Of a stretch of 64,000 nt of DNA, positions 33,870 to 63,719 are shown piece by piece; the first letter of the stretch is position 1, and each line of letters starts with the position of its first letter. A program made the position numbers and the translations under genes. Location: contig CM097885.1 in assembly GCA_044892525.1 (NCBI GenBank), positions 207,762,001-207,826,000 of the forward strand, read 5' to 3'. The notes under the pieces are model-generated. The model was not told the DNA's origin. It searched no databases and was given only the letters and a program-made list of their open reading frames with translations. This DNA is from Schmidtea polychroa. Its lineage: Eukaryota.

Positions 33870-34196
33870 TGTTGAGCTGAGCCGAAAGATAGCTGGGAAA
33901 TCAGGTTAAATTTAACTAAAGAAAAATAAAAAATAAAATAAATAGATCGAGGAATAAAATAGAATAGAACATAAGAAAAGTAATAATTAGAAAATAAGAA
34001 TTAAAACAAAAAACATAAAAATAAGAACAATTAAATAGGACAATAGAATGACGAAAAATAACGTAAAAGGTAGTAGATAATAAGGAAATTAAGGAAAATA
34101 AATAAAAACATAATTTTAATAAAGAAAATAAGAAGAAATAACCCAAAAACAAGGAAAATAAATTAAATGAATAAAATAAGGCGGTACTCAATTCTG

Positions 34197-34229
34197 ATTG
34201 GTCCGCATAAACAAAAAATACCTATATAA
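34197..34229 (+). promoter_or_regulatory. Candidate LTR promoter (inverted CCAAT box + TATA box)
   Basis: ATTGG at 34197-34201 and TATATAA at 34223-34229; the same motifs occur in the 3' LTR. Motif match only. Confidence 0.45.
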
Positions 34230-36416
34230 GTAAGCAGCAAATTCACTATAATCAATGTTAAAATCAAACCAATTATAGGTACCCGACAATCAGGAAAACC
34301 AAACCATACTCAGACAACTATTAGGGACAGTTTTATAGACTACTCATTCATATAACCGATTGGATCAGTTTATATTTCGGCTCAGCCTTTGGAACTACAG
34401 AATTTTTCAAATAATAAAGTAAGGATGTATTGCTATTATGAAATTTGTTTTTGAAGGATTTAAATATTTCTATTATATTAACCTAACTTTTGAATAAAAA
34501 CTTCTCCATTCGGTTTCGATCTTTTAACGATTTTATGGTTCATAAATTAATTTACAGGTCAATGATATATAAATATTTATGTTATGTTTTGTCATCAAAC
34601 GTATTGATTATGCTAAAATTATTTGTTTTGAGAAACGTGGAGTTGAGGAGACCCACGCCATGGTATGAGGAGCCTTCGGGAGCTCAGCCGGCGGGTGTGG
34701 ATCTCTTCAATCACGCAGCTGACGTGGGCCGGAATGTGGGGGCTTCCTCACGGGTCCGTCGCTGAGGGAAATAAAATGCTGCAAGCACGAGTTTAAAGTG
34801 TAGAGGAATATATTCCAATATTGAAAAGTAGAGCAAATCTGAATTGAAAATGACTGAGGTGGCTACAAACTCTTCCAAGTATGAGAATCTCATTTTCTTA
34901 GGTACTATACTTTGAAATTTTCGTCTAACATCATGAATTAGTCTCGATCGACTATTCACTTCCATGATACTCTATCATCTTGCGATAAATCCCCTTTTCG
35001 TCAAAATTCATGTCAATTTTCATCTTAACTGATAGAACCCAAGAGCTAATACATTCACTCTGATGTTATGCAGTAGTATAGGAAGTATATATGGAAGATC
35101 ACTGAACGCTTTTATTTACTAAAAAGATATTTGGAGGAGTACGTTATTGTTTTTATCAAAAGCGCCTTAACTCTTTCTGAAATCCCCAATAGCCGTAATC
35201 TGAAGTCCGTTCAGTAAAAGACCCTCTGGCCTCATAACACAGTAAACATACAAGGAGAATTTACAAAAGTATTTAATTAAAAAGATAAAATTTCGTAAAA
35301 AATTCTTTATTTTCATTAAAAAAAAAATATAATTCTGAGTTACCAGTAGTAGGAGCATAATAATCATTTCGGGAAGTTACCCCTGATAGATGTCGCTAAG
35401 ATGAGGAAGGGCTTGAGCGAGTTGATAAAATCTCCACCGGACAGGATATTCTGATGTAAAGCGAGAGAGGCAGTATAATAAAAAATTTTTTCCAAATTTT
35501 CGTGTTTGCTGAGAACTAAACAGTAGATTCATATCGGAGCTGAATGATTAAATTCCAAAAATCGATGTAATCCAAGTTCGGCAGTATAGATAAAATATGA
35601 ACATGTACAGTGAGAAGGTATAGTCTGTCTGTAAGTATGCAGTGAATGAGATTGAGCAATCACCTGCAGGTAGAATCACATGTACAATAGCGAACAATTG
35701 CATATGGCTTAGTCGATGTGATACTCATGCTGCCGGTACGGTAGCAGTGAATTCACAATTTAATCATCGATAATGAGAAAGTCGAATCCCATTGCACACA
35801 CATGGTGAACACCAACTTTTCTGAGAGATCTGAACACTAAGCCAGTTAACGAGGAGGCATGCAACAGATGGTTTGCATCATACGTGTCATACAACTAGAA
35901 TAGAAATTAGACTAGTCTAACTTATCAGCAGTGTGATTGATCAAACAGAGCAAAGTCCATTTGACTGTAAAGTTTTTGTAATCGCACGCATTTACAATTA
36001 ACTCAAATTAGAGTATTATAATCACGAATAAACTCAAATCTTTTAATTAATTTATTATCCCGATGTATTGCACCTGTCTGAATTGTTTTGCTGATAGTAA
36101 AGTCGAATCTGGTCACGCTCATGTATTGACAAGTTTTCTTAATCCGCAATAAAATTATCATGTTGGGCAAAAAGGGGGGGGGAGAATTAATTTGTTAACC
36201 CGTAAACCTATAATTACTTTACGGATGTAATATCAATCAACAGGAAGTTTCGCTAACAGTCATTCCGTTTTCTTCTTGTCGGTCATTTCAACCCATGAAT
36301 GTAATGTAGGGAATTTATGAGCCTTAATAAATAATTACGCTACTCTGATGGATTAGTAGAGCTAGCCAATTTTCGTCTTATCTCTATTATTCTTTCTTCA
36401 TTATAGCTATCAAAAG

Positions 36417-37160
36417 ATGTTGCCAAGCACGAAATCGCCCATCAAACCCTGCTTCTCCTGCTCGGACAAAAATACCGTAATCCGAGAATTACAGGCCCAG
36501 ATCGGTCGATATAAAAAGAAGATCGACGATCTGGAAGGTACATGGTTTAGCCCAGTACAAATGAAGGAAGTTCAAAAGAAATTGTACCGCAGTGAGCATT
36601 GTCGCGATGCTTTGATAAGCGAAAGTAGAGCTCAGCGTAGCCTAATCAAAGAGCAGTCCGAAGCTCTACATAAAGTTTACGTTCAAGCCGCTACAACCCG
36701 AAGGATTGTTAGTATTCCGATTAAAGAAGCGGACAATGTCTTCCCCGTTCACCATGAACCTTCAGTTAGTTCGCCACCCTTGTCGAAAAGATCTTGTCAG
36801 GAATGTGTGGAGGCCGACCTCTCCCCCAGGCCATCGGACGTACCTACTACCGGCACTGGCAAGGTATTGCATTCAGCCACGACGTCCTCGGCAATCTTGT
36901 CTGCCAACCCCTCAAAACCTAAGCGCCGCCAATTGTCCAGAGCGGAGCGTAAGAAGCGCCAACGTGAACGAGCAATGGTCAAACAACGAGAACTATCTGC
37001 CAACCACCTAAGTGCTTCGAATGATCCACCCGTAACGATCGATCTGACCGTAGGAATCCCAGGGCGAATCATATCTGCCGCTGGTGTGACTTGGGAGGAG
37101 AATGCCTCCGAGTTTTTTGATCTAGATGAGCTATTGGCGGATGCGGGGTGGGAGAAGTGA
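36417..37160 (+). CDS. LTR-encoded 247-aa protein (coiled coil, basic NLS-like patch, acidic tail)
   Basis: Intact ATG-TGA ORF that is more GC-rich than its surroundings; polypyrimidine-TATAG acceptor 10 nt upstream; AATAAA at 37291. Confidence 0.75.
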   Translation: MLPSTKSPIKPCFSCSDKNTVIRELQAQIGRYKKKIDDLEGTWFSPVQMKEVQKKLYRSEHCRDALISESRAQRSLIKEQSEALHKVYVQAATTRRIVSIPIKEADNVFPVHHEPSVSSPPLSKRSCQECVEADLSPRPSDVPTTGTGKVLHSATTSSAILSANPSKPKRRQLSRAERKKRQRERAMVKQRELSANHLSASNDPPVTIDLTVGIPGRIISAAGVTWEENASEFFDLDELLADAGWEK

Positions 37161-37738
37161 TGGCCGCAACACAATGCAACCGTGCAGGGTGCGAATGGAC
37201 AAATATACTATCTTGACTCTTTTTCTTCTTAATCTATTCTCCACCAAGTGTACTTGTTATGTAGTGTATAATTATTTAATGTATCATGATAATAAAATAA
37301 AGAAATATTTGGTTAAATTTTTGTTGTTGTTTAAATCTAACTAGCTGTGATAAAGGTTCAGCGTAGTGTTCGCAAAGCGAGAGTAAAGTTTGAGTTCGAG
37401 AGGCAGTGGTCAATTTTGTACCGAATAATGGGTCAGGGTAGAGGGAGAATCTGATGAGGTAAACAGACGTAAGTCCTTCCATCGGCCGTCAGAAAAGGGA
37501 AGTCGAGGCCTCAGTAAGGAGTAGTCCTAAGGTAGGGGCTCACCTGCTTACTGGAGTCTCGCCGACATAGCACATTTCCAACGTGAAGCAATTCGCGGGT
37601 GCTATGTTGGAGGGCAAGTTGTGCGGGGTCCTGCTCCGGGTTGACACGGGCGTATGTAGCGTAATAATATGGGCACGCACCCCTAGACAAGGACGTAGAT
37701 TGAGCAGAGTCAACCAAGCACTACCCCAGCATAATTTT

Positions 37739-37756
37739 TGGGGGCTCAGCCGGGAT
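37739..37756 (+). promoter_or_regulatory. Primer-binding site, tRNA-Pro
   Basis: TGGGGGCTCAGCCGGGAT versus the canonical Pro PBS TGGGGGCTCGTCCGGGAT (2 mismatches), 7 nt after the LTR end. Confidence 0.85.
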
Positions 37757-38011: not shown

Positions 38012-38497
38012 ATGACGGAATTCGCAGAACAGATGCAACAATTAATTAATTTCATTAATATAGAAAACGACCCTATTAAAACACTCATACAAAAAGGAAA
38101 GCGAATCAACAGCATTTTACTCCAAGCAATCGGACATACACCAGTCGTACCTAACCACGTGTTATTGGCCGCAGGTTTAAGCCACTCAGATGAAAAGATA
38201 AATCACGAAACAGTATACCAATGGTACCTAAAACGACTAAAAAACCCGGCCCTAAATCTAGAATACGAGCGAATAAAAGATCAACTACATACAATATCAG
38301 AGGCAATCGAACAAAAGATACAAGAGAAACTCACCAAATTGCGAACCTGTCTGTCTTGCAATCTTCGCCCTATACGCATACTATTTTTACCTTGTGGACA
38401 CCTCAGTCATTGTGAAGAGTGCGTGAAAGATCTGAAACGATGTGCAATATGTAAAAATGGGATAAAAGAAACCCATATGGTTTATTACGGTGATTAA
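38012..38497 (+). CDS. IAP-type C-terminal RING finger protein without BIR domain
   Basis: RTCLSCNLRPIRILFLPCGHLSHCEECVKDLKRCAICKNGIKETHMVYY at the extreme C-terminus after a coiled segment, as in cIAP/XIAP; strong acceptor upstream, AATAAA downstream. Confidence 0.9.
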   Translation: MTEFAEQMQQLINFINIENDPIKTLIQKGKRINSILLQAIGHTPVVPNHVLLAAGLSHSDEKINHETVYQWYLKRLKNPALNLEYERIKDQLHTISEAIEQKIQEKLTKLRTCLSCNLRPIRILFLPCGHLSHCEECVKDLKRCAICKNGIKETHMVYYGD

Positions 38498-39057: not shown

Positions 39058-39579
39058 TGAGCTGTTGAATAGTCCAGCCGGTCAAGGAAAATGAAAACTG
39101 AGCTGTGAAAAGTCCAGCCAGTTCGGAGATATTAAGATCGAGTTGTTGAATAGTCCAACCGATCAGAAGGAAGAAGATTGAGCTGTTGAATAGTGCCAGC
39201 CAGTCGTAAGATCGAGTTGTTGAATAGTCCAACCGATCAGAAGGAAGAAGATTGAGCTGTTGAATAGTGCCAGCCAGTCGTAAGATCGAGTTGTTGAATA
39301 GTCCAACCGATCAGAAGGAAGAAGATTGAGCTGTTGAATAGTGCCAGCCAGTCGTAAGATCGAGTTGTTGAATAGTCCAACCGATCAGAAGGAAGAAGAT
39401 TGAGCTGTTGAATAGTGCCAGCCAGTCGTAAGATCGAGTTGTTGAATAGTCCAACCGATCAGAAGGAAGAAGATTGAGCTGTTGAATAGTGCCAGCCAGA
39501 CGTAAGATCGAGTTGTTGAATAGTCCAACCGATCAGAAGGAAGAAGATTGAGCTGTTGAATAGTGCCAGCCAGTCGTAA
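39058..39579. repeat. 74-bp tandem array (6 copies) plus degenerate upstream units, in the leader of element B
   Basis: GAGTTGTTGAATAGTCC recurs at 39140, 39214, 39288, 39362, 39436 and 39510. Each unit has two sub-repeats sharing GAG(C/T)TGTTGAATAGT. Confidence 0.97.
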
Positions 39580-40947
39580 AGGCCTAGAAAAATGAGAAAT
39601 AGCAGTTAAGCTACAATGAGATAATATTTACAATTAATAGAGAAAGGGAATATTAAAGCTAGCTAGAAACAAATTGAATATAATTACGAAAATTTGAGTT
39701 TAGAGAGGAAATAAACGAGCTCGGGGAAAAGATAATAAAATTATAATGAAAAAGGAAGGAGAAGAAGAAAATGAATTAAAGAAATAATGAGAAAATAAAG
39801 AATAGGTGAAATGGAGATAATGAGTAGAAGAAGAAAGTAACTAGCTAATTAAAGGGATCCCAGTGAAGTAGAGAAACTCTACTGAATTTTTTTTTTGGGT
39901 AAACCGGGAAAATGTATTTTTATCGGTTCCAGAGTAGAACCGAGTGGGATAATAGTAAATATGAAAAGTAAAACAGCGACAACAGCGCAAAGGAATAAGA
40001 AAACGAAGGGGGGTAATAAGCAGAGACCGACAACGACCTATTTTTACTATAATTGATAACGAATAGATAATTATTACGACTTTATAGATAATTGTTACTA
40101 CCCCATATAGATAATTTAAAATCGACGGAAAATACGGGCTGATGGGAAATTATAACCCGCAGAAAGGATTTCACAAAAGATAGGGGAAGCACAAACAGAA
40201 ACCTAAAAGGTGTCTGTTTTTGAATGTTGTAGAAAGAATGATGAAGTCGTGTAAGCAAATGCAACACGAGATCATTTTTTCATTTTAGATATCAAGCCAA
40301 TCCAGTCAACCAAGACAATCCAGAACCTGCACAAAAGGAATTCGAAGAAATCGACAATCAACCAAGGATAAATCCATTCAGAACCCGCACCGAGAGACAC
40401 AGCAACCGGAAGACTCCAGAACGGAAGAAGATACAGATAGCGACATCTCCAACTTCGAACGAATCATCGATATATTCAACCTCATAGTATTAGCAGCCAT
40501 CTGCCAAGGATTAGTAAATCTCCTCAGGATCTCAGTAGCAGATTCATACAGAATATTTATCGAAGGAAACACAATCAGAACCGAACTCGTCCAATTCAAT
40601 AGCCGCTAATTACCAAGAAGCGTAAGAAAGGAATCACGGATAAACCCAATCTTAGATCTTCAAGTAAGCCAGGAGACGTATTATTTTCAGGAGACGAATT
40701 ACAACAACTCAAAAGAGGACGATCTATTAAACATCAAAGAGGAATATCACAAGGAGCAAGAAGAACCAATCAAGTACCCATATTTGACCAAGAAAATCTC
40801 GGATATACCCCTAGTCGATCTCGAAGTAGAGAAAGTCTGTCCGATATCACTAATAGTTTAGCAACGTCAACCGAGGAATTATCAGCCCAAAGTTTAGTCA
40901 CATCGTTAGACAATTTAAAAGAAACAGACGAACCTAGAACACCAATC

Positions 40948-43152
40948 ATGACGAATGTCGTAAAAACCGACGAGTATAAAGAGAAGTTCAGAGGAGAACC
41001 GTTCAATGGAAATGCAAACAAGTTAGCAACGTTCATAACTAATTTTGAAGTTTATATCACTGTGTGTGGATGGACATCCGAAGCAATTAGTAAAAGGATG
41101 CCGTTGTTTTTGTGCGATAGTGCATTAGAAGTATATTTAGAAGCTAAAGAGAGAGACACGAAATTAGAAAAGTGGGAAGATATTAAAACATTCCTGAAGA
41201 AAACCTTCGGAGCCAGTAAGCCAATCAACCAGGCGTTGGGCGAACTAGCAAATAGGAAACAAAGAGCAAACGAATCGATAACATTATATGCCAGTGAATT
41301 GCGGAGATTAGCGAAGAAAGCAATGAATGGAAAATTACCCGAAGAAAATCTGATCGGTTATTTCATAGAGGGATTACGCCGAGAAGAAGTAAGAGCCTCA
41401 GTAGGTTGTCAAATGTGCAAAACATTAGAGGAAGCCATAGATTGGGCTACAAGATGCGAGCTCCACCTCCCAGCTCAAATAAATATTATGCAAGAAGAGG
41501 GAAGGATAGCGACAGCAATAGCGAAAGCGGATAACGGAGATAACAACAATCAAGAACCGAAAATGAATCAATTTATACCAGGAGCGCATCAAATTTTCAA
41601 ACCACCACAAGGACGATCAAATGGGAATAATGGTAATCGTAACAACCTGAATAATGAGAACAATTTTAATAATCGACGAAATACGAACGATAACAAGCAG
41701 TGCCGAACATGCGGTAAACCAGGACACTGGGACAGAGATTGCTATAGAAATTCAAATTGTAATCGTTGCGGACGGCGTGGACATACCGAAAATGTATGCC
41801 AATTGAGAGGTTGTTTTAACTGTGGTCAGCCAGGTCACATCTCCAGAGATTGCCGAGAAAGGGGCCAACAACAACGACCACCACAGCGAAATAATAATTA
41901 TATGGCGAATCCGCAACGACAAAGCAACCCTAGCGAAGGAAAACAAATGAACGTTATGCAGGAAATCTCGCAGATGAAACAGATGATGCAACAAATGATG
42001 AGGCCAAGACAAGAATCAGCACCCCAACAAACCCAGAATATACGTATGATGAGGAGTACCGAAAATCCCAACAATTATGAAGTGCATCAACATGTACAAG
42101 AATGGCAAAGGCTACAGGCCGAGGAAGAGAGGATAAAACAAGAACGCAACCAACAACGACAAGAACAACCATTGCGAATAAATATGATGAAGTTAGTAAA
42201 AGACATGAAGAGCCAGTATTGCTACAATTACGGGAAAAACCCAAGGGTAGTACCCATGACTGAACCAGAAAAGGTAAAAGAAACAACCACGGAAATGAAA
42301 ACAGAGAATTCAACCACGATTTTAAAAGGAAACCAGAGAATTCAGAAAATATTCTGGAAAAAGATAAAAGATAAAATCGAAAAAGAACATAATAAAGCGA
42401 AAACCGAGACAGAAGATGAAAATAACAAGAGCAAGGAACAAACCAGTCAACTAAACCACCAAATGCTACAGGAATTAGAATCAGAAGAAACAACGATATT
42501 TGAAAGAAAGAAACTAAAGAGAGTACCAAGGATGAGAAATTTGCAAATCAATATGATGAAAAGGACAAAAGATGTAGCATCGTCAGACGAAGAAGAAGAC
42601 TATGTAAGTAGTTTGGGTGGAGAAATACTACAGCTAAATGAAATAAGCGAACCTCCAAAAGGGGAAATCAAAGAGGAAGAAAGCGAAAGCGAGATAACCA
42701 GTGGAAGTGAAGACGAGGATGTCGAAATAAAGTTGAGAAAAGCAGGGGAGGAAGCGATAAAACAGCTAGCCGAAATACTCCCAGTAGTAGTGAGGAACCA
42801 AGAGTTCATCGACGTAATTCCATTCAGGCGATTCGTGCAAAAAGTGATGAAATTGGAAAGAAACGAGAAAGATCTAATACCAAACGAGGAAAAATCAATT
42901 ATAAAAAAGTATATGGAAAAAATGAAGCAGGCCGATACCACGCGGTATGTAATAAAAATTGGAACGAGTAGAGGACTTGAAAGAATGTGGATAAAAAATA
43001 CAGTCACCGACGAACTTTTCGATTGGATACGAGAACATTTGGGAAGTTCGAGAAAGAAAGAATATCTGTATCAATACCAAGGTGAACAGATCAAACCAGA
43101 TATGCACTTAGTAGATGCACTGAAATGGCCAGGAAATACTGAAGTTGCATAA
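40948..43152 (+). CDS. gag: Element B Gag (capsid, three CCHC knuckles, Q-rich and acidic extension, C-terminal Ubl-like domain)
   Basis: FNGNANKLATFITNFE...RKQRANESITLYASELRRLA...FIEGL; CRTC..GHWDRDC, CNRC..GHTENVC, CFNC..GHISRDC. The frame is open upstream to ~40603. Confidence 0.95.
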   Translation: MTNVVKTDEYKEKFRGEPFNGNANKLATFITNFEVYITVCGWTSEAISKRMPLFLCDSALEVYLEAKERDTKLEKWEDIKTFLKKTFGASKPINQALGELANRKQRANESITLYASELRRLAKKAMNGKLPEENLIGYFIEGLRREEVRASVGCQMCKTLEEAIDWATRCELHLPAQINIMQEEGRIATAIAKADNGDNNNQEPKMNQFIPGAHQIFKPPQGRSNGNNGNRNNLNNENNFNNRRNTNDNKQCRTCGKPGHWDRDCYRNSNCNRCGRRGHTENVCQLRGCFNCGQPGHISRDCRERGQQQRPPQRNNNYMANPQRQSNPSEGKQMNVMQEISQMKQMMQQMMRPRQESAPQQTQNIRMMRSTENPNNYEVHQHVQEWQRLQAEEERIKQERNQQRQEQPLRINMMKLVKDMKSQYCYNYGKNPRVVPMTEPEKVKETTTEMKTENSTTILKGNQRIQKIFWKKIKDKIEKEHNKAKTETEDENNKSKEQTSQLNHQMLQELESEETTIFERKKLKRVPRMRNLQINMMKRTKDVASSDEEEDYVSSLGGEILQLNEISEPPKGEIKEEESESEITSGSEDEDVEIKLRKAGEEAIKQLAEILPVVVRNQEFIDVIPFRRFVQKVMKLERNEKDLIPNEEKSIIKKYMEKMKQADTTRYVIKIGTSRGLERMWIKNTVTDELFDWIREHLGSSRKKEYLYQYQGEQIKPDMHLVDALKWPGNTEVA

Positions 43153-54801: not shown

Positions 54802-54961
54802 AAAGGAATATGACTGTATATAATTGTAAAAAGTAAGTATATCTTATGTATATAACAGTACTATATCTTTATATAAGCGCGGTATCAATATTATACAATA
54901 ACGGGAATCATAAAATAAAATTAAATTTACATAAGAGTTGAAAAGTGTATATAAATTAAGA

Positions 54962-55321
54962 ATGGATCAAGGAAATAACGAAATGAACCACAATACAGTA
55001 ACTGAAGAATTATGGAAGCAACAATGTGCCGTATTAGCACAATTAGTGTCCAATTTGCAAGAACAAGGACTGACGATGCACAGAAACCTAATCGAGAGTA
55101 TGAACAGAGGATTTAGTTATTTGAAGATAATTGAAGACCAGAGGTTAAAAATCGAACAAATGCAAAGAGAAATGGAGAGGATAACCCAATATAGCCATAG
55201 ACAGGAAATTGAATTAGAAAGAATGATGGAGGAAGCAGAACAGACAGAAATAGAAGACTGGTCGGAATGGCTAATGAATAGAGAGGAGAGCGGACACGAA
55301 GCCGACTCTTCCGAACCCTAA
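54962..55321 (+). CDS. Element B accessory coiled-coil/acidic protein
   Basis: Intact ORF (first ATG 54962) with the same A-rich codon usage as the other element genes; flanked by AT-rich spacers. Confidence 0.7.
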   Translation: MDQGNNEMNHNTVTEELWKQQCAVLAQLVSNLQEQGLTMHRNLIESMNRGFSYLKIIEDQRLKIEQMQREMERITQYSHRQEIELERMMEEAEQTEIEDWSEWLMNREESGHEADSSEP

Positions 55322-55406
55322 ACCAAACCTAGCTTAAAATGTAAATAATTGTAAATAAAATATCGAACCTGTATCGATAAGAACTATATGTACATATAAT
55401 TATAGA

Positions 55407-56795
55407 ATGGATAAACGACAAAGAGAAGAGTTCAGAGAGATTGTCGAGCAAATCCGAAAATCTACAACGATCAGAATACACAAACATGTTATGTGCGGAA
55501 TATGTGAAAAGTTACTAAAAGAACCCCACCAAACCCTATGTGGATGCAGAGTATGTAAGGAATGTATCAGTGAAGCAATAAAGAATAGACCACAGTGGTG
55601 CCCGGTGTGCAAAGAGACACTAATATCGAGTTTAGAAGACACTAACGAGGATAAAGCCGCCGTGAAAGACATGTTAAACACCAACCTGGGATGCAAAAAT
55701 GCCCCATGCGAATGGAAAGGAGTAATATGGAAGGTAGTGCAACATATGGGGGAATGTATGTATAGAATCGGCCAGTGTGAAAGGTGCCATAAAACCATTC
55801 GAGCAAGCGAAGAAAAAGAGCATCATAGCCAGTGTGAAGAGAGACTAGAAAGATGTGAACATTGTGGAGAAATAGATACGTGGAAAAATCTCACCATCAA
55901 ACATCACAATGTCCAAGAAGAAAAGGTATGTGCAGAGTTCAGTGGGGAATGCCCGAACGGATGCGAGGAAGGGAGAATAATAAAAATAGCCCAACACTTA
56001 AAAGAATGTGAGAAGAAAAGGATGATATGTGTACTAGGTAAATGGGGCTGTCAGAAACTATTACACCGAGGAGAGTTACCACATCATTTAGTAGAAAATG
56101 CTTCAACCCACGCAGAAATGTGGTCGACTGCGTTACAAGAAAGCGATGAGAAAGTAAAACAAATGGAGATGGAGATAACATCGTTGAAAGTGTTAGTCAA
56201 AGAACTACTAGAAGAAAGGGAAGCGTTCGAAGAAGCCCGAGCAAACATAAAGATGCAAATGAACCGAATAGAAATCAGTAATAATCAGGCCAAGGAGCTA
56301 CACCAGAAAATACGGGAAATAAATCTAAATGAAGTAATACCAACAGCACCCTACATATGGAAAATAACGGAAGTAAAAGAAAGAATACGAAAAGCAAAAA
56401 CCGGAGAAGAGACAAGAATAACAAGTCCTGCATTCCATTCTTGGAAAAATGGGTACAAGATGAAAATAAGGATATATCCCAACGGAGATGGAACCGGATT
56501 GAATACACATTTTTCGATATTTTTTCTATTATGTAAAGGGGAATATGACGAAATAATAGAATGGCCATTCCAGGCAAAAATCGATATCACAATGATGAAT
56601 GACCAAAGCGTCCACGAACAAAGCTTTAAAACGACGGGAACCCAGCTGTGTTACCGGCGACCTATTGATGAGGAAGGAGCAGCATCGGGAGCGCCTACAT
56701 TCATCTTGCAGCAAAAGATGGAAGAGATGACGAGAAATGACACAATATATATAAAAATGACAGTACGAAGGGAAGGAAAGGGTAGAACGGAGTAA
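55407..56795 (+). CDS. traf: Full-length intronless TRAF-like protein (RING, TRAF zinc fingers, coiled coil, MATH/TRAF-C)
   Basis: RING CGIC...PHQTLCGCRVCKEC...CPVC; C..GC.W.G...HMGEC fingers; MATH YIWKI...SPAF...GYKMKIRIYPNGDGTG..THFSIFFLLCKGEYD..IEWPF. Confidence 0.96.
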   Translation: MDKRQREEFREIVEQIRKSTTIRIHKHVMCGICEKLLKEPHQTLCGCRVCKECISEAIKNRPQWCPVCKETLISSLEDTNEDKAAVKDMLNTNLGCKNAPCEWKGVIWKVVQHMGECMYRIGQCERCHKTIRASEEKEHHSQCEERLERCEHCGEIDTWKNLTIKHHNVQEEKVCAEFSGECPNGCEEGRIIKIAQHLKECEKKRMICVLGKWGCQKLLHRGELPHHLVENASTHAEMWSTALQESDEKVKQMEMEITSLKVLVKELLEEREAFEEARANIKMQMNRIEISNNQAKELHQKIREINLNEVIPTAPYIWKITEVKERIRKAKTGEETRITSPAFHSWKNGYKMKIRIYPNGDGTGLNTHFSIFFLLCKGEYDEIIEWPFQAKIDITMMNDQSVHEQSFKTTGTQLCYRRPIDEEGAASGAPTFILQQKMEEMTRNDTIYIKMTVRREGKGRTE

Positions 56796-56989: not shown

Positions 56990-58045
56990 ATGACACAAGA
57001 GAGAGTAACCGAAAATACGATAGCCCCAACCAATACCCACAAGACACAAATTCCCAGAGAATATAATGAAAAATGGAACAAAGTAATGTTCCAACTAACT
57101 AACCTCACCCGAAACTACATCGAAGAAGCTAGAGAAGATGAGAACAGTAAATATCAATGGCTAATCCACAATTTAAGAGAGGAAGCCGAAGCATGTAAAA
57201 GAGCATCAAAATGGGCATCATTAGAAAATACCCGCCAAGAAGCGCACAGCCACTACTTAAAGCAGCTAGTGCAGGAAGCGAGAAAGAGACTTACCGATGA
57301 GAACACCAAGCGCGAAGCGGAAAAGCAAATAGAAGGAAGGAAAATGATGCACTTAGTGGCAGAAGCGAGAAAATGGAAAAGACAAAACAGTGAAATGAAA
57401 AAAGAGATGAAAGAATTGCCCATGAGACTCGGATATGAAAGCGAACAAGGTAAATGGGAGGAGAATTTAATAATAAAGGAAGAATTGAAACGGTTGAGAA
57501 AGGTCGCCGCCCGAAGTCAAACCTGGCAAACAAAAGCCATGGAGTTTGAGCGACATTTGGCAATGAAATGCGACATAAGAGAGCACGAGAACGCCGCAAT
57601 GGAAGAGATGATAACCCAACAAGCAGGACGGATTGTGGAATTAGTAAATCAGGTCGAAGAGATGAAAAGAGACCTTAATGGATTACAAGGATCGCTGGAA
57701 CAAAGAAACATGGTCCTAGCGGGAAAAAATAAAAAATTAGAAAACGAGAGGAAAATGTATACCGAAAATATTAAAAACTTAGAAATAGAAATTGAAAAAT
57801 GGAAGGGCGACGAGAAAATCAAGGCCCTAGACAAACAAATAGAGGCGAAAGACGAAGAGACAAGGTATCTCACCTATCTGCTCGACGAGGAATTGAACAT
57901 CACTCGAGCTCTAAGAGACGAAATTAATGAATTGAGAGCTCAAATCCCCCAATATTACCTACCCTATGACCCTATTGCGATACAGTTGCATCCCGCGGTC
58001 GATAGTGATGAAGGTTATGTGGGACTGGAGGAAACCTTCCTATAA
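56990..58045 (+). CDS. Element B accessory long coiled-coil protein
   Basis: Intact 351-aa E/K/R-rich heptad ORF; TTTAG acceptor 2 nt upstream of the ATG. Confidence 0.8.
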   Translation: MTQERVTENTIAPTNTHKTQIPREYNEKWNKVMFQLTNLTRNYIEEAREDENSKYQWLIHNLREEAEACKRASKWASLENTRQEAHSHYLKQLVQEARKRLTDENTKREAEKQIEGRKMMHLVAEARKWKRQNSEMKKEMKELPMRLGYESEQGKWEENLIIKEELKRLRKVAARSQTWQTKAMEFERHLAMKCDIREHENAAMEEMITQQAGRIVELVNQVEEMKRDLNGLQGSLEQRNMVLAGKNKKLENERKMYTENIKNLEIEIEKWKGDEKIKALDKQIEAKDEETRYLTYLLDEELNITRALRDEINELRAQIPQYYLPYDPIAIQLHPAVDSDEGYVGLEETFL

Positions 58046-58215
58046 GGGTGAATAAAAGATAAAAACAAAAAAAAAATCGGGACGTACATCCCAAACAAAA
58101 AAATTAAAGTATTATAAAAGTATTCAAGGGACTGTAACCCGAACTATTAAATTTTATATAAATGTATATGTATAAGTCGCACTATAGCGCACCATTAACT
58201 GTACATATTATAGAT

Positions 58216-58926
58216 ATGAAAATCGAGGAAATAATAGAAATTGCGAGCGACGTAGAAGAGGGAGAGATTGAGGCAGAAACAACAAAAACACAAACGTTAA
58301 AGGCCGAGTTACGGGAAGAGAAGTACGAAAACGAGAGACTAGTAAACAAATATATAGAAGACCGAAAAATGATTAAAATACTTAAGAAGGAGTGCGAAGT
58401 GCTAGGAGAAATAAAGAGAGAAGTCGAAGAAAAGAATGAATGGCTGCAAGAACAACGAAAACGAGGAAGAAATTGGGAAAAGATTGCAGAAGAACTATGG
58501 CAAGAGAGGGCAAGCTTCAAGGCAGAAGAAGTAATCCAGGATTATTGGAAAACAGAGGCGAAAGAACGCCAAATAACTATAAATAAATTAAATCAACAAT
58601 TGGAGGAAAAACAACGAGAAAGTGAGGAAATGAAGAAATGGATTCGCAAATACCAAGAGATCGAGAAAAAACAACAACAACAACAACAACAACGAAACCT
58701 TTCGCAGGAAAACGAACAAGATTTCCTACAAATCGAACTAAAAAGGAATCTCGACAAAAAACGGGAAGAAATTAGAAGACTGAAAAAGGAGATAAGGCAC
58801 ATGAAAAGGGAGGTCCGTGAAAAGAACAGACAGTTGGAAATGCTGCCCGAGTTAAGACACAGAGTCATTAAAGCGGAATCCACCTTGATGAGAATCGCCG
58901 AAAATAACCCAAATCAGAACCATTAA
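58216..58926 (+). CDS. Element B accessory coiled-coil protein with poly-Q
   Basis: Intact ORF. The likely start is the ATG at 58216 after a TATAG acceptor (the track starts at 58162). Confidence 0.75.
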   Translation: MKIEEIIEIASDVEEGEIEAETTKTQTLKAELREEKYENERLVNKYIEDRKMIKILKKECEVLGEIKREVEEKNEWLQEQRKRGRNWEKIAEELWQERASFKAEEVIQDYWKTEAKERQITINKLNQQLEEKQRESEEMKKWIRKYQEIEKKQQQQQQQRNLSQENEQDFLQIELKRNLDKKREEIRRLKKEIRHMKREVREKNRQLEMLPELRHRVIKAESTLMRIAENNPNQNH

Positions 58927-58966
58927 ATTAAGGGTCACTAAAACCAATTGTAAATAAACATAATGA

Positions 58967-59626
58967 ATGTATAATAGTATCATGCGAGGCGAGATGATGA
59001 TAACAATGGCGGTATTGATGATTCTGATGGAGAACAAACAATTAAACGCCCAACCGAAAATCGTACGAGATTACCGCAATCGAAATCAAGAACCTAAACA
59101 AGAATCCGGCAAATGCACATACCCTATGACCGTAAAAACCCATATCATCCAAACCATTCAATCAACCCGATCCCACATCAACAACATCCAAACAATGTGT
59201 AAAAAGAATCCCATTTGTAAAATGATAAACAAACAAATCTTCGAACAAAGCCAACAAATCGACCAGTTGGAACAACAAATGCAACAAGAGAATTTTGAAA
59301 ATCTTGTAGAAAAGCCAAAAACACCTCCCGAAATCAATGACACCCATTATCTCACATACGTGGTGATCGCAGAAACCCTCCTCCTATGTCTACCAATACT
59401 CATGATAATTTACGAAGTTAGAAATAGATGTAGAATCTCGACAGCAATAAGAGTAACCTCGAACAGAAATCCTCAAGAAGTGCCGCTGACAAATCTTAAC
59501 CCAACCCCATTCCGACCTCGAATCCCGAGTAACCAACCAATCCAGCCGAATTCTAACAGTCAGACCTATCTCAACATCAATACCCAAACCAACCAACAGC
59601 CGCCAGCAGAAGCATCAAATAGTTAA
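58967..59626 (+). CDS. Element B accessory predicted type I membrane protein
   Basis: N-terminal hydrophobic MMITMAVLMILM, a Cys-containing helical ectodomain, TM YVVIAETLLLCLPILMII, and a P/N/Q-rich tail. Confidence 0.7.
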   Translation: MYNSIMRGEMMITMAVLMILMENKQLNAQPKIVRDYRNRNQEPKQESGKCTYPMTVKTHIIQTIQSTRSHINNIQTMCKKNPICKMINKQIFEQSQQIDQLEQQMQQENFENLVEKPKTPPEINDTHYLTYVVIAETLLLCLPILMIIYEVRNRCRISTAIRVTSNRNPQEVPLTNLNPTPFRPRIPSNQPIQPNSNSQTYLNINTQTNQQPPAEASNS

Positions 59627-59854
59627 CAGTCCATAAACTCTAACTCAAACATTTGTGTTATCATATGTGGAAACTTTTATTGTATATAAAAACTATCACC
59701 TTAAGTGATACTTGCTTGGTCTTGATTTGACCTATATCTTAGAATAAAAATCTTTTTTTTTGTATAATTGTTTCGATATATCCTTTTTATGAATGCATGA
59801 AGTAAGATAACTATGCAATTGCGGGACGCAATTTTGATGGGTCCCCGAGTGATT

Positions 59855-62800
59855 TGTTGGGCTGAGCCGAAAGATAGCTGGGAAATCAGGTTAAATTTAA
59901 CTAAAGAAAAATAAAAAATAAAATAAATAGATCGAGGAATAAAATAGAATAGAACATAAGAAAAGTAATAATTAGAAAATAAGAATTAAAACAAAAAACA
60001 TAAAAATAAGAACAATTAAATAGGACAATAGAATGACGAAAAATAACGTAAAAGGTAGTAGATAATAAGGAAATTAAGGAAAATAAATAAAAACATAATT
60101 TTAATAAAGAAAATAAGAAGAAATAACCCAAAAACAAGGAAAATAAATTAAATGAATAAAATAAGGCGGTACTCAATTCTGATTGGTCCGCATAAACAAA
60201 AAATACCTATATAAGTAAGCAGCAAATTCACTATAATCAATGTTAAAATCAAACCAATTATAGGTACCCGACAATCAGGAAAACCAAACCATACTCAGAC
60301 AACTATTAGGGACAGTTTTATAGACTACTCATTCATATAACCGATTGGATCAGTTTATATTTCGGCTCAGCCTTTGGAACTACAGAATTTTTCAAATAAT
60401 AAAGTAAGGATGTATTGCTATTATGAAATTTGTTTTTGAAGGATTTAAATATTTCTATTATATTAACCTAACTTTTGAATAAAAACTTCTCCATTCGGTT
60501 TCGATCTTTTAACGATTTTATGGTTCATAAATTAATTTACAGGTCAATGATATATAAATATTTATGTTATGTTTTGTCATCAAACGTATTGATTATGCTA
60601 AAATTATTTGTTTTGAGAAACGTGGAGTTGAGGAGACCCACGCCATGGTATGAGGAGCCTTCGGGAGCTCAGCCGGCGGGTGTGGATCTCTTCAATCACG
60701 CAGCTGACGTGGGCCGGAATGTGGGGGCTTCCTCACGGGTCCGTCGCTGAGGGAAATAAAATGCTGCAAGCACGAGTTTAAAGTGTAGAGGAATATATTC
60801 CAATATTGAAAAGTAGAGCAAATCTGAATTGAAAATGACTGAGGTGGCTACAAACTCTTCCAAGTATGAGAATCTCATTTTCTTAGGTACTATACTTTGA
60901 AATTTTCGTCTAACATCATGAATTAGTCTCGATCGACTATTCACTTCCATGATACTCTATCATCTTGCGATAAATCCCCTTTTCGTCAAAATTCATGTCA
61001 ATTTTCATCTTAACTGATAGAACCCAAGAGCTAATACATTCACTCTGATGTTATGCAGTAGTATAGGAAGTATATATGGAAGATCACTGAACGCTTTTAT
61101 TTACTAAAAAGATATTTGGAGGAGTACGTTATTGTTTTTATCAAAAGCGCCTTAACTCTTTCTGAAATCCCCAATAGCCGTAATCTGAAGTCCGTTCAGT
61201 AAAAGACCCTCTGGCCTCATAACACAGTAAACATACAAGGAGAATTTACAAAAGTATTTAATTAAAAAGATAAAATTTCGTAAAAAATTCTTTATTTTCA
61301 TTAAAAAAAAAATATAATTCTGAGTTACCAGTAGTAGGAGCATAATAATCATTTCGGGAAGTTACCCCTGATAGATGTCGCTAAGATGAGGAAGGGCTTG
61401 AGCGAGTTGATAAAATCTCCACCGGACAGGATATTCTGATGTAAAGCGAGAGAGGCAGTATAATAAAAAATTTTTTCCAAATTTTCGTGTTTGCTGAGAA
61501 CTAAACAGTAGATTCATATCGGAGCTGAATGATTAAATTCCAAAAATCGATGTAATCCAAGTTCGGCAGTATAGATAAAATATGAACATGTACAGTGAGA
61601 AGGTATAGTCTGTCTGTAAGTATGCAGTGAATGAGATTGAGCAATCACCTGCAGGTAGAATCACATGTACAATAGCGAACAATTGCATATGGCTTAGTCG
61701 ATGTGATACTCATGCTGCCGGTACGGTAGCAGTGAATTCACAATTTAATCATCGATAATGAGAAAGTCGAATCCCATTGCACACACATGGTGAACACCAA
61801 CTTTTCTGAGAGATCTGAACACTAAGCCAGTTAACGAGGAGGCATGCAACAGATGGTTTGCATCATACGTGTCATACAACTAGAATAGAAATTAGACTAG
61901 TCTAACTTATCAGCAGTGTGATTGATCAAACAGAGCAAAGTCCATTTGACTGTAAAGTTTTTGTAATCGCACGCATTTACAATTAACTCAAATTAGAGTA
62001 TTATAATCACGAATAAACTCAAATCTTTTAATTAATTTATTATCCCGATGTATTGCACCTGTCTGAATTGTTTTGCTGATAGTAAAGTCGAATCTGGTCA
62101 CGCTCATGTATTGACAAGTTTTCTTAATCCGCAATAAAATTATCATGTTGGGCAAAAAGGGGGGGGAGAATTAATTTGTTAACCCGTAAACCTATAATTA
62201 CTTTACGGATGTAATATCAATCAACAGGAAGTTTCGCTAACAGTCATTCCGTTTTCTTCTTGTCGGTCATTTCAACCCATGAATGTAATGTAGGGAATTT
62301 ATGAGCCTTAATAAATAATTACGCTACTCTGATGGATTAGTAGAGCTAGCCAATTTTCGTCTTATCTCTATTATTCTTTCTTCATTATAGCTATCAAAAG
62401 ATGTTGCCAAGCACGAAATCGCCCATCAAACCCTGCTTCTCCTGCTCGGACAAAAATACCGTAATCCGAGAATTACAGGCCCAGATCGGTCGATATAAAA
62501 AGAAGATCGACGATCTGGAAGGTACATGGTTTAGCCCAGTACAAATGAAGGAAGTTCAAAAGAAATTGTACCGCAGTGAGCATTGTCGCGATGCTTTGAT
62601 AAGCGAAAGTAGAGCTCAGCGTAGCCTAATCAAAGAGCAGTCCGAAGCTCTACATAAAGTTTACGTTCAAGCCGCTACAACCCGAAGGATTGTTAGTATT
62701 CCGATTAAAGAAGCGGACAATGTCTTCCCCGTTCACCATGAACCTTCAGTTAGTTCGCCACCCTTGTCGAAAAGATCTTGTCAGGAATGTGTGGAGGCCG

Positions 62801-63715
62801 ACCTCTCCCCCAGGCCATCGGACGTACCTACTACCGGCACTGGCAAGGTATTGCATTCAGCCACGACGTCCTCGGCAATCTTGTCTGCCAACCCCTCAAA
62901 ACCTAAGCGCCGCCAATTGTCCAGAGCGGAGCGTAAGAAGCGCCAACGTGAACGAGCAATGGTCAAACAACGAGAACTATCTGCCAACCACCTAAGTGCT
63001 TCGAATGATCCACCCGTAACGATCGATCTGACCGTAGGAATCCCAGGGCGAATCATATCTGCCGCTGGTGTGACTTGGGAGGAGAATGCCTCCGAGTTTT
63101 TTGATCTAGATGAGCTATTGGCGGATGCGGGGTGGGAGAAGTGATGGCCGCAACACAATGCAACCGTGCAGGGTGCGAATGGACAAATATACTATCTTGA
63201 CTCTTTTTCTTCTTAATCTATTCTCCACCAAGTGTACTTGTTATGTAGTGTATAATTATTTAATGTATCATGATAATAAAATAAAGAAATATTTGGTTAA
63301 ATTTTTGTTGTTGTTTAAATCTAACTAGCTGTGATAAAGGTTCAGCGTAGTGTTCGCAAAGCGAGAGTAAAGTTTGAGTTCGAGAGGCAGTGGTCAATTT
63401 TGTACCGAATAATGGGTCAGGGTAGAGGGAGAATCTGATGAGGTAAACAGACGTAAGTCCTTCCATCGGCCGTCAGAAAAGGGAAGTCGAGGCCTCAGTA
63501 AGGAGTAGTCCTAAGGTAGGGGCTCACCTGCTTACTGGAGTCTCGCCGACATAGCACATTTCCAACGTGAAGCAATTCGCGGGTGCTATGTTGGAGGGCA
63601 AGTTGTGCGGGGTCCTGCTCCGGGTTGACACGGGCGTATGTAGCGTAATGATATGGGCACGCACCCCTAGACAAGGACGTAGATTGAGCAGAGTCAACCA
63701 AGCACTACCCCAGCA
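59855..63715 (+). repeat. Element B 3' LTR (3,861 bp)
   Basis: TGTTGGGCTG...CCCCAGCA followed by TSD CCTC; all internal ORF translations match the 5' LTR apart from one substitution. Confidence 0.97.
62401..63144 (+). CDS. Second copy of the LTR-encoded 247-aa protein
   Basis: Translation identical to 36417-37160. Confidence 0.75.
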   Translation: MLPSTKSPIKPCFSCSDKNTVIRELQAQIGRYKKKIDDLEGTWFSPVQMKEVQKKLYRSEHCRDALISESRAQRSLIKEQSEALHKVYVQAATTRRIVSIPIKEADNVFPVHHEPSVSSPPLSKRSCQECVEADLSPRPSDVPTTGTGKVLHSATTSSAILSANPSKPKRRQLSRAERKKRQRERAMVKQRELSANHLSASNDPPVTIDLTVGIPGRIISAAGVTWEENASEFFDLDELLADAGWEK

Positions 63716-63719
63716 CCTC

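What the first reader, a model, noticed from the sequence alone, without database searches (positions are those of the whole stretch)
33870..63715. Giant 'complex' retrovirus-like LTR element carrying an apoptosis/NF-kB/ubiquitin toolkit
Seen: a complete 29.8-kb element with 3.86-kb LTRs, TSD and PBS. Besides gag/pol it carries an env-like glycoprotein, a Bcl-2-like domain, three Ubl domains, ankyrin modules, an FN3-like membrane protein, an IAP-type RING gene and a whole TRAF gene. Known: TRAF, cIAP RING ligases, IkB-like ankyrin proteins and Bcl-2 act in the same TNF-receptor/NF-kB/cell-death circuitry, and large DNA viruses carry mimics of them. Typical Ty3/gypsy elements are 5-10 kb, and ~30-kb Burro elements are reported from the planarian S. 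mediterranea. Inference: a cell-to-cell or infectious metavirus that suppresses death and immune signalling in its host cell.
Basis: partly seen in the sequence, partly recalled or inferred. Interest (0 to 1): 0.97.

Follow-up and report, generated by a model that had tools for sequence, protein, structure and literature searches.

The report
Burro-type giant planarian retrovirus-like element
This is a real, very young 29.8-kb retrovirus-like LTR element that carries an envelope gene plus cell-death and ubiquitin-signalling modules, but this kind of element (Burro of planarians) and its odd gene set are already published, so it is a good example rather than a discovery.

Summary
The structure is real. 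Two 3,862-nt LTRs (99.92% identical, TG..CA ends) span 33870-63715, with a 4-bp target duplication and a tRNA-type primer binding site. The order is gag (three CCHC knuckles), ubiquitin-like and Bcl-2-like region, viral fusion glycoprotein, PR-RT-RNaseH-IN, then ankyrin repeats. A full TRAF-like gene, an IAP-type RING ORF and coiled-coil and membrane ORFs are also present.

Strongly supported: env-like glycoprotein (Pfam 1.8e-45), TRAF (PDB 2e-29), IAP-type RING (7e-11), ankyrin. Weakly but consistently supported: Bcl-2-like fold and one or two ubiquitin-like domains. Not supported: FN3, IkB-likeness, "three" Ubl.

The gag-to-pol gene carries four frame changes, so "complete" holds for layout only.

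This architecture is already described for Burro/GYPSM1 elements of Schmidtea mediterranea (Jurka 2007; Grohme 2018; Arkhipova & Yushenova 2019, PMC6431247). That includes env in frame between gag and pol, BCL2, SUMO-like, MATH-TRAF and ankyrin motifs. The provirus and host-tinkering hypothesis is published there too.

The differences here are small. TRAF is a separate 3' gene, there is no BIR, no dUTPase was detected, and the LTR carries an ORF. Relatives share the core and the TRAF module, so it is not a one-off capture. Function remains untested.

The parts
33866..33869 (.). left copy of the 4-bp target site duplication (CCTC)
33870..37731 (+). 5' LTR, 3,862 nt, starts TGTTG and ends CAGCA
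36417..37160 (+). 247-codon ORF inside the LTR (second copy at 62401-63144); Ser/Lys/Arg-rich, no family match
37738..37755 (+). primer-binding-site-like stretch starting TGG, 6 nt after the LTR
   Evidence: the tRNA is not identified (no tRNA gene in the window)
38012..38497 (+). leader ORF of 161 aa with a C-terminal IAP-type RING (zf-C3HC4_3); no BIR
   Evidence: Pfam 6.4e-11; PDB best matches are cIAP2, cIAP1, livin and XIAP RINGs; BIR motif scan negative
39059..39650 (+). tandem array of a 74-nt unit in the long leader
40948..54801 (+). gag-to-pol polyprotein gene, given as one part. It runs gag, Ubl-like, Bcl-2-like, env-like, PR, RT, RNase H, IN, ankyrin, membrane tail. It is interrupted by four frame changes; no nonsense substitution was seen
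   Evidence: relatives P0022 and L001 read through the corresponding gag/next-region junction in one frame
41101..41382 (+). Retrotrans_gag domain
   Evidence: Pfam 3.3e-10
41701..41853 (+). three CCHC zinc knuckles
43439..43708 (+). possible beta-grasp (ubiquitin-like) domain
   Evidence: Weak Pfam PI3K_rbd and UBXL hits. Strand-strand-helix-strand pattern with pLDDT 60-70. Foldseek top hits are SUMO, ubiquitin, UBL and PI3K-RBD, all with E above 0.05
44396..44623 (+). probable ubiquitin-like domain, shared with the metagenome relative L001
   Evidence: Alignment A8. All 5 weak PDB profile hits are ubiquitin-fold proteins. Weak Pfam RA_2 hit
45158..45670 (+). Bcl-2-like helical domain directly upstream of the env signal peptide
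   Evidence: Pfam Bcl-2 E 0.05, profile positions 28-100 of 100. 45 of 48 weak PDB profile hits are Bcl-xL, at its C-terminal part. Foldseek top 50 are all Bcl-xL/Bcl-2, but with E 0.15-0.7 on a pLDDT-44 model
45737..47526 (+). env-like fusion glycoprotein module, from the Met-rich hydrophobic signal-peptide-like start to the membrane anchor; contains one of the four frame changes
   Evidence: PF24664 1.8e-45 and 2.7e-19, covering profile positions 3-579 of 653. Signal-like segment. Membrane anchor. 12 invariant cysteines across three relatives that are 36-40% identical
48094..48420 (+). aspartic protease domain; contains two of the four frame changes
   Evidence: RVP 1.2e-07 for the first half; the second half matches the E2 protease in another frame
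49069..49545 (+). reverse transcriptase (RVT_1), YxDD present
   Evidence: 7.7e-36
49732..50121 (+). RNase H
   Evidence: 2.3e-39
50443..51012 (+). integrase (H2C2 zinc domain plus rve core)
   Evidence: 2.2e-20 and 8.7e-13
51871..52110 (+). ankyrin repeat block 1, in frame after the integrase
   Evidence: Ank_2 1.7e-15
52879..53136 (+). ankyrin repeat block 2
   Evidence: Ank_2 4.6e-08
53788..54660 (+). C-terminal tail of the polyprotein with two hydrophobic membrane-type segments; no family match
54938..55321 (+). 127-aa acidic, helical ORF; no family match
55407..56795 (+). full-length TRAF-like gene (RING, TRAF zinc fingers, coiled coil, MATH/TRAF-C), 462 aa
   Evidence: Pfam MATH 3.3e-26. 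PDB: TRAF2/3/1 TRAF-C 2e-29 and TRAF5/6 RING-zinc finger 4e-14. TRAF5 at 24% identity over 92% of the length
56990..58045 (+). 351-aa Glu/Lys-rich coiled-coil ORF
58162..58926 (+). 254-aa coiled-coil ORF (weak SMC/Rad50-type hits only)
58967..59626 (+). 219-aa small type I membrane protein candidate (hydrophobic N-terminus, one membrane span, Pro/Asn/Gln-rich tail); no FN3 match
59855..63715 (+). 3' LTR
63716..63719 (.). right copy of the target site duplication (CCTC)

Best explanation
The region is one very recently inserted copy of a Burro-type giant Ty3/gypsy (Metaviridae-like) endogenous retrovirus-like element of a dugesiid planarian, most likely Schmidtea.

Shown:
- Near-identical LTRs, a target duplication and a PBS-like site.
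- A single-direction gene array: gag, Ubl-like region, Bcl-2-like domain, env-like glycoprotein, PR, RT, RNase H, IN, ankyrin repeats.
- A RING ORF in the leader, five ORFs 3' of pol including a full TRAF, and an ORF in the LTR.
- The env module is a complete type I glycoprotein unit: a Met-rich signal-like start, a cysteine-rich ectodomain and a membrane anchor. It is kept in three relatives that are only 36-40% identical.

Inferred:
- The element replicates like a retrovirus: LTR transcription, tRNA-primed reverse transcription, integrase insertion with a 4-bp duplication.
- Env and the downstream ORFs are expressed from subgenomic or spliced RNAs, or from internal starts.
- The Bcl-2-like, TRAF-like, IAP-type RING, ubiquitin-like and ankyrin modules act on host cell-death and ubiquitin/TRAF signalling and so keep the producing cell alive.

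This copy has four frame changes in gag-to-pol. As assembled it cannot make the full polyprotein, unless those changes are assembly indel errors.
For: Retroelement structure:
- LTR pair, termini, TSD and PBS.
- PR-RT-RH-IN order and gag with three CCHC knuckles.
- Env: PF24664 above its gathering score, with a signal-like segment and an anchor and 12 invariant cysteines.
- TRAF, RING, ankyrin.
- Bcl-2-like: four weak but concordant lines (and the position predicted from PMC6431247).
- Ubl-like.

Relatives:
- A second, divergent element in the same window (about 21027-30597) shares the Bcl-2-like, env, PR, RT and IN core at about 31-43% identity.
- Metagenome scaffold L001 shares gag, Ubl, Bcl-2-like and env.
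- Protein P0022 has the MATH module inside the homologous polyprotein.

Literature and host:
- The published description of Burro matches.
- BURRO1 is transcribed, enriched in intestine and controlled by PIWI (PMC8532177).
- Host hints: flanks of 25-31% G+C and a mir-753 precursor.
Against: - No purine-rich tract lies before the 3' LTR.
- Four frame changes interrupt the polyprotein.
- The Bcl-2 and Ubl calls rest on sub-threshold scores and on models with pLDDT 43-44.
- BIR and dUTPase, both reported for Burro1, were not detected here.
- Identity to a named Burro family could not be tested, because Repbase/Dfam and the planarian genomes are not among the tools.
- Nothing here shows expression, particles, or any effect on cell death.
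Confidence: 0.85

Rival explanations
1. It is a purely intracellular retrotransposon. The env-like and signalling modules would be inherited baggage or serve intracellular steps such as trafficking or polyprotein processing. The element would spread only vertically, by reinsertion in stem or germ cells, with no cell-to-cell or infectious phase.
For: - Env sits inside the gag-pol frame rather than as a separate 3' gene (PMC6431247). That is an awkward position for a secreted glycoprotein.
- This copy is frame-broken.
- No exogenous viral relative was found in IMG/VR or JGI metagenomes.
Against: - The signal-like start, 12 cysteines and membrane anchor are conserved in three relatives at 36-40% identity. 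This indicates long-term selection on a membrane glycoprotein.
- A Met lies at the start of the hydrophobic segment in all three relatives. This fits separate expression of env.
Confidence: 0.3
2. The accessory genes are a one-off capture or an assembly chimera. On this view host TRAF, RING and ankyrin gene fragments lie between two LTRs in this copy only.
For: - The second element in the window shows no TRAF, RING or ankyrin match.
- No exact copies of the TRAF, RING or coiled-coil ORF products are on record.
Against: - All ORFs lie on one strand, with uniform composition and A-rich skew, between LTRs that are 99.92% identical and share one TSD.
- Relatives P0022 and P0023 carry TRAF zinc-finger and MATH modules inside the homologous polyprotein.
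- MATH_TRAF_C, ankyrin and accessory ORFs are published for Burro.
Confidence: 0.05
3. The copy is in fact intact. The four frame changes would be single-base indel errors of a long-read assembly of an A/T-rich genome.
For: - All four interruptions are frame changes, and no substitution to a stop was seen.
- The LTR pair differs by only 2 substitutions and 1 indel.
- All nine other ORFs are open.
Against: - An indel rate like that of the LTR pair (1 in 7.7 kb) predicts about 2 indels in 14 kb, so four real ones are not implausible.
- The reads are not available to check.
Confidence: 0.35

Closest known systems
[quoted passage not shown] 2018; Arkhipova & Yushenova 2019, PMC6431247)
   Same: - Giant Ty3/gypsy LTR element of about 30 kb with long LTRs and tandem repeats.
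- gag with three CCHC knuckles.
- Ubiquitin/SUMO-like and BCL2-like motifs upstream of a mononegavirus-type env that lies between gag and pol.
- PR-RT-RH-IN, ankyrin repeats, a MATH/TRAF module, SMC-like coiled coils and accessory ORFs.
   Different: - Here TRAF is a complete separate gene 3' of pol, not a domain between gag and the Ubl region. Relative P0022, only 31-42% identical, has it inside.
- No BIR and no dUTPase were detected.
- There is a RING-only ORF in the leader.
- Direct sequence comparison with the Burro library sequences was not possible.
Burro-like element of Dugesia (Girardia) tigrina (PMC6431247)
   Same: TRAF is encoded by an accessory ORF rather than inside the polyprotein. 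The gag-env-pol layout is the same.
   Different: - There the TRAF ORF is upstream of gag, gag has two CCHC knuckles, and a midasin-like region is present.
- Here TRAF is downstream of pol, gag has three knuckles, and no midasin-like match was seen.
Env-bearing Metaviridae (gypsy-type errantiviruses; nematode Cer and Tas elements). This comparison comes from general knowledge, not from a tool
   Same: A Ty3/gypsy core that has acquired a fusion glycoprotein from an unrelated virus lineage.
   Different: - Those elements carry env as a separate 3' ORF of a different origin (baculovirus F, phlebovirus or herpesvirus gB types).
- They are 7-10 kb long and have no signalling toolkit.
Complex retroviruses and foamy-like fish endogenous retroviruses with accessory ORFs (cited in PMC6431247)
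   Same: Several small ORFs lie downstream of pol, and coding sequence reaches into the LTR. Both imply subgenomic expression.
   Different: They belong to a different RT lineage (Retroviridae). Their accessory genes are not homologues of TRAF, IAP RING or Bcl-2.
Large DNA viruses carrying Bcl-2, IAP and ankyrin mimics (herpes-, irido-, baculo- and poxviruses)
   Same: The same functional theme of host cell-death and ubiquitin modules carried by a mobile genome.
   Different: There is no sequence relation. The Bcl-2-like model matches cellular Bcl-xL/Bcl-2 better than any viral protein in BFVD.

Membership tests
Ty3/gypsy LTR retroelements (Metaviridae-like) | LTR pair with TG..CA ends, a short target duplication and a PBS next to the 5' LTR | tested here: met
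Ty3/gypsy LTR retroelements (Metaviridae-like) | Domain order PR-RT-RNase H-IN, and gag with CCHC knuckles | tested here: met
Ty3/gypsy LTR retroelements (Metaviridae-like) | Polypurine tract before the 3' LTR | tested here: not met
   No purine run of 8 or more in the last 300 nt. This is not a strict defining feature
Burro giant retroelements of planarians | About 30 kb in total, with an internal region above 20 kb | tested here: met
   29,846 bp in total and 22.1 kb internal
Burro giant retroelements of planarians | Mononegavirus-type env placed between gag and pol in the same direction | tested here: met
   PF24664 lies between gag and PR. The same is seen in the second element of the window and in L001
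Burro giant retroelements of planarians | BCL2-like and Ubi/SUMO-like motifs upstream of env | tested here: inconclusive
   Sub-threshold but concordant results
Burro giant retroelements of planarians | MATH/TRAF module and ankyrin repeats | tested here: met
   TRAF is in a different position from Burro1
Burro giant retroelements of planarians | BIR motif and a dUTPase-like domain, as reported for Burro1/GYPSM1 | tested here: not met
Burro giant retroelements of planarians | RT/IN clustering with, or nucleotide identity to, the Repbase or curated Burro sequences | not testable with these tools
   There is no access to Repbase, Dfam or planarian assemblies. Grohme 2018 is not held
Burro giant retroelements of planarians | Host is a dugesiid planarian | tested here: inconclusive
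   Flanks of 25-31% G+C and a mir-753 precursor at 81 bits. That mir-753 is a planarian family is from my memory; no paper was found to confirm it
TRAF proteins | N-terminal RING, TRAF zinc fingers, coiled coil and C-terminal MATH/TRAF-C in one protein | tested here: met
IAP proteins | At least one BIR domain | tested here: not met
   No Pfam BIR hit and no BIR motif on the plus strand. Only the C-terminal RING is IAP-like
Bcl-2 family | Pfam Bcl-2 match above its gathering score, or a confident helical-bundle structure with BH motifs | tested here: inconclusive
   14.5 bits against a cutoff of 31.4. Bcl-xL hits at its C-terminal part, E about 0.4. Foldseek top 50 are all Bcl-xL/Bcl-2, but on a pLDDT-44 model with E of 0.15 or more
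Monjiviricetes-type viral fusion glycoproteins (PF24664) | Profile match above the gathering score, plus signal sequence, cysteine-rich ectodomain and C-terminal membrane anchor | tested here: met
   The second element also gives a weak hit to bornavirus G
Fibronectin type III membrane proteins | A recognisable fn3 domain | tested here: not met
   No fn3 hit at E up to 1 in any ORF. No structure model was made for the membrane ORFs
IkB-like ankyrin proteins | Specific similarity to IkB beyond generic ankyrin repeats | tested here: not met
   Only generic ankyrin-repeat proteins were found

The most novel reading that the evidence does not exclude
This element could belong to a Burro lineage that has not been described in detail and is organised like a complex retrovirus. 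It has a RING ORF ahead of gag, five ORFs after pol including a free-standing full TRAF, and a coding U3. Its env unit has its own start and signal sequence and is still under selection. That would point to recent or ongoing cell-to-cell or horizontal spread in planarians.
Probability: 0.2. Interest if true: 0.6.

Novelty: already known. Interest (0 to 1): 0.3.

Why it matters
Burro elements are the largest LTR retroelements known. They make up a notable part of planarian genomes, and they are the only reported case of an env gene lying between gag and pol. A near-pristine copy such as this one is a good template for descriptive work on several questions:
- How is a 14-kb polyprotein with an embedded glycoprotein expressed?
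- Are the Bcl-2-like, TRAF-like and RING modules expressed in the intestinal cells where BURRO1 RNA is seen?
- How do accessory modules move between polyprotein and free-ORF positions?

None of this is a new kind of system. The value lies in a well-annotated example and in two small additions. First, the signal-like start of env is conserved in three distant relatives. Second, the core shared by divergent lineages is gag, Bcl-2-like, env and pol, while TRAF, RING and ankyrin are variable.

Tried and rejected
Searches that led nowhere:
- Exact-product look-ups for the TRAF, RING and 254-aa ORFs, and for P0022 and P0023, found nothing.
- The word-indexed protein search with the ankyrin tail returned only generic ankyrin proteins.
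- The full HMMER scan of 1.84 billion representatives with the region upstream of env gave just two hits. Planarian proteins are evidently scarce in these collections, so no genome-wide copy census was possible.
- IMG/VR and JGI metagenome scans with the env alignment found no relative.
- Grohme et al. 2018 is not held.
- No paper on mir-753 in planarians was found.
- NCBIfam added nothing.

Structure prediction:
- Both AlphaFold jobs gave low confidence (pLDDT 43 and 44), because only 2-4 sequences were available. Their Foldseek matches are used only as weak, concordant hints.
I did not resend that row and used window sequences only.

Rejected ideas:
- An IAP gene: no BIR.
- dUTPase between PR and RT: no match.
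- FN3.
- Capture or chimera origin of the accessory genes.

2. My notes 1 and 2 and the printout list bounds of the ORF pieces of the broken gag-pol genes, and my reasoning worked out where some interruptions lie. That amounts to places of breaks.

Other points:
- Consensus lines printed by the alignment tool were not used.
- The N runs were left alone.


Full report
OBSERVATION

A blastn comparison of the two ends shows one pair of direct repeats, 33870-37731 and 59855-63715. They are 3,862 nt long with 2 mismatches and 1 gap, which is 99.92% identity.
- The repeats start TGTTG and end CAGCA.
- The four bases CCTC flank the element on both sides.
- Six bases after the 5' LTR lies an 18-nt stretch beginning TGG, as expected for a tRNA primer binding site.
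- No purine run of 8 or more lies within 300 nt of the 3' LTR, so a classical polypurine tract is not evident.
- Coding is confined to the plus strand. Open frames there reach 2,147, 1,342, 849 and 478 codons. The minus strand reaches at most 197, and 200 shuffles at most 189. The A-rich skew is uniform from 40 to 59 kb.

ANATOMY

In order, the element contains the following.
- Each LTR holds a 247-codon ORF with no family match.
- The 3.2-kb leader holds a 161-aa ORF. Its C-terminal RING is of the zf-C3HC4_3 type (6.4e-11). The closest solved relatives are the RINGs of cIAP2, cIAP1, livin and XIAP. A BIR motif is absent from the whole plus strand, so this is an IAP-type RING and not an IAP.
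- A 74-nt tandem array follows.
- The gag-to-pol gene (40948-54801) then encodes, in order:
  - Retrotrans_gag and three CCHC knuckles;
  - a region of about 870 residues with almost no database relatives;
  - a viral fusion glycoprotein of Pfam family PF24664, Monjiviricetes_fusion (1.8e-45 and 2.7e-19, profile positions 3-579 of 653);
  - aspartic protease, RT, RNase H and integrase;
  - two ankyrin blocks and a tail with two hydrophobic segments.
- Five further ORFs follow pol:
  - a 127-aa acidic ORF;
  - a 462-aa TRAF-like protein;
  - two Glu/Lys-rich coiled-coil ORFs;
  - a 219-aa candidate type I membrane protein.

The TRAF-like protein is complete. Residues 21-162 match the RING and zinc-finger parts of TRAF5 and TRAF6. 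Residues 246-454 match the coiled coil and TRAF-C of TRAF2, TRAF3 and TRAF1, at E 2e-29. A mammalian TRAF5 aligns over 92% of its length.

THE WEAKER DOMAIN CALLS

Bcl-2-like. Four lines point the same way.
- Pfam Bcl-2 scores E 0.05 (14.5 bits against a cutoff of 31.4), but covers profile positions 28-100 of 100.
- A profile of this region from three relatives gives 48 weak PDB hits. Of these, 45 are Bcl-xL chains, all aligned at the C-terminal part of that protein, with E about 0.4-2.
- An AlphaFold model of the 171-residue domain is all-helical but of low confidence (pLDDT 44). Even so, its top 50 Foldseek matches in the PDB are all Bcl-xL or Bcl-2 over 115-170 columns, with E 0.15-0.7.
- The domain lies directly upstream of env, exactly where BCL2 is placed in Burro by Arkhipova and Yushenova.
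I take the call as probably right, but not as proven.

Ubiquitin-like.
- There are weak Pfam hints to beta-grasp families.
- The 871-residue model (pLDDT 43) gives Foldseek top hits that are almost all SUMO, ubiquitin, UBL and PI3K-RBD domains, with E of 0.05 or more.
- A two-sequence profile of 44321-44680 gives five weak PDB hits, and all five are ubiquitin-fold proteins.
- So one domain is probable, a second is plausible, and a third is not established.

FN3. No match appears in any ORF.

IkB-likeness. The ankyrin region retrieves only generic ankyrin proteins.

dUTPase. It is reported between PR and RT of Burro1, but was not detected here.

THE ENV MODULE

In this element, in the second element of the window and in the metagenome relative L001, the glycoprotein ectodomain is immediately preceded by a Met-containing hydrophobic stretch. 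That stretch looks like a signal peptide with a small-residue cleavage site. The ectodomain is followed by a membrane anchor. Twelve cysteines are invariant among three sequences that share only 36-40% identity. This is the signature of a membrane glycoprotein kept by selection, not of a decaying relic.

STATE OF THIS COPY

The gag-to-pol gene is interrupted four times, each time by a change of frame:
- one between the gag part and the following region;
- one inside the env-like module;
- two in the protease.
No substitution to a stop was seen. Relatives P0022 and L001 read through the first of these junctions in a single frame. The nine other ORFs are open.

The LTR pair has 1 indel in 7.7 kb of compared sequence, so four indels in 14 kb are compatible with real mutations. 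They are equally compatible with long-read assembly errors. I cannot tell which applies.

RELATIVES AND THE ONE-OFF CAPTURE QUESTION

- The same window holds a second, divergent element on the same strand (about 21027-30597). It has gag with three CCHC knuckles, a region homologous to the Bcl-2-like and env part (31% identity, 1e-83), PR, RT, RNase H and IN (36-52% identity). It shows no TRAF, RING or ankyrin match. It carries one frame change and three in-frame stops.
- L001 is a 5.9-kb ENA metagenome scaffold. It carries gag knuckles, the Ubl and Bcl-2-like region, and env at 39% identity.
- Two UniParc proteins were the only hits among 1.84 billion representatives. They show the gag C-terminus, the region after gag, TRAF zinc fingers and a MATH domain in one frame. 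In that relative the TRAF module sits inside the polyprotein.
- So the core is ancient and shared. The TRAF module is recurrent but mobile in position. The accessory set is not a one-off capture.

COMPARISON WITH WHAT IS KNOWN

Arkhipova and Yushenova 2019 (PMC6431247) summarise Jurka 2007 (GYPSM1) and Grohme et al. 2018 (Burro-1 to -4). They describe:
- giant gypsy-like elements of more than 30 kb in Schmidtea mediterranea, present in thousands of copies;
- gag with three CCHC knuckles;
- MATH_TRAF_C, Ubi2/SUMO-like, BCL2, BIR, ankyrin, Smc-like and dUTPase-like motifs;
- an env region with hits to fusion glycoproteins of arthropod and fish mononegaviruses. They call it the first case of env located in frame between gag and pol.
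They also note that accessory ORFs may alternatively exist as subdomains of the polyprotein; in the D. tigrina element TRAF is an upstream ORF. They propose that Burro elements are integrated proviruses that meddle with apoptosis and ubiquitination.

BURRO1 RNA is abundant, enriched in intestine and repressed by SMEDWI-2 (PMC8532177).

Every main point of the finding, including its inference, is therefore already in print.

What differs here is a matter of detail:
- TRAF is a free gene 3' of pol.
- There is a RING-only leader ORF and no BIR.
- No dUTPase was detected.
- The LTR contains an ORF.
Whether these details match Burro-2, -3 or -4 could not be checked.

HOST

The flanks have 25-31% G+C. 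Rfam finds a mir-753 precursor at 6253-6314 with 81 bits. From memory, mir-753 is a planarian family; I found no paper to confirm this. A dugesiid planarian, probably Schmidtea, is the likely host, but this is not proven.

MECHANISM

Shown:
- the retroelement machinery and insertion signature;
- the presence and order of the modules;
- conservation of the env unit.

Inferred:
- replication by LTR transcription, tRNA priming and integration;
- expression of env and the 3' ORFs from subgenomic RNAs or internal starts;
- action of the Bcl-2-like, TRAF-like, RING, Ubl and ankyrin modules on host death and ubiquitin/TRAF signalling.

I put identity as a Burro-type element at about 0.85. I put the infectious, death-suppressing reading at about 0.3, because it is not tested anywhere.

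VERDICT

This is a real, well-preserved and nicely annotated member of a published family. The novelty is low.

Noticed in passing
window 21027-30597 (+): A second, divergent Burro-like element. It has gag with three CCHC knuckles, a Bcl-2-like-homologous region, PF24664 glycoprotein (1.4e-50, plus a weak bornavirus G hit), PR, RT, RNase H and IN. It carries one frame change and three in-frame stops. No LTR pair was found in the window, and there is no TRAF, RING or ankyrin match.
   Followed up: partly
window 33434-33869 and 63722-64000 (+): The open frame just left of the element continues in the same frame just right of it once the 4-bp duplication is allowed for. So the element landed inside an ORF of something else. 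That ORF has no Pfam match, and a zf-BED ORF lies upstream at 31989-32477. The two pieces were compared apart and not joined.
   Followed up: partly
window 6253-6314 (+): A mir-753 microRNA precursor, 81 bits against a gathering score of 62. A 77%-identical repeat of the surrounding 280 nt lies at 7367-7633 and may hold a paralogue.
   Followed up: no
window 1-2243 (+): A third Ty3/gypsy pol fragment (RT, RNase H, IN) running off the left end of the window. It is 28-41% identical to the pol of the main element.
   Followed up: no
window 8884-10512 (+): A pogo/Tc5-like DNA transposase, with an HTH_Tnp_Tc5 domain and DDE_1 at 1.3e-45.
   Followed up: no
window 18763-19941 (+): A fragment of a protein-primed type B DNA polymerase (DNA_pol_B_2, 7.7e-11), next to an N run. 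It may be a Maverick/Polinton-like remnant.
   Followed up: no
window 36417-37160 and 62401-63144 (+): A 247-codon ORF is open in both LTR copies, in the G+C-richest part of the LTR. If it lies in U3 it would be carried at the 3' end of the genomic RNA, as LTR-borne genes of some retroviruses are. It has no homologue.
   Followed up: partly
L001 (ENA metagenome scaffold, 5,908 nt): A Burro-like gag, Ubl, Bcl-2-like and env fragment sits in an environmental metagenome assembly at 42% G+C. This shows that relatives occur outside the annotated planarian data.
   Followed up: partly
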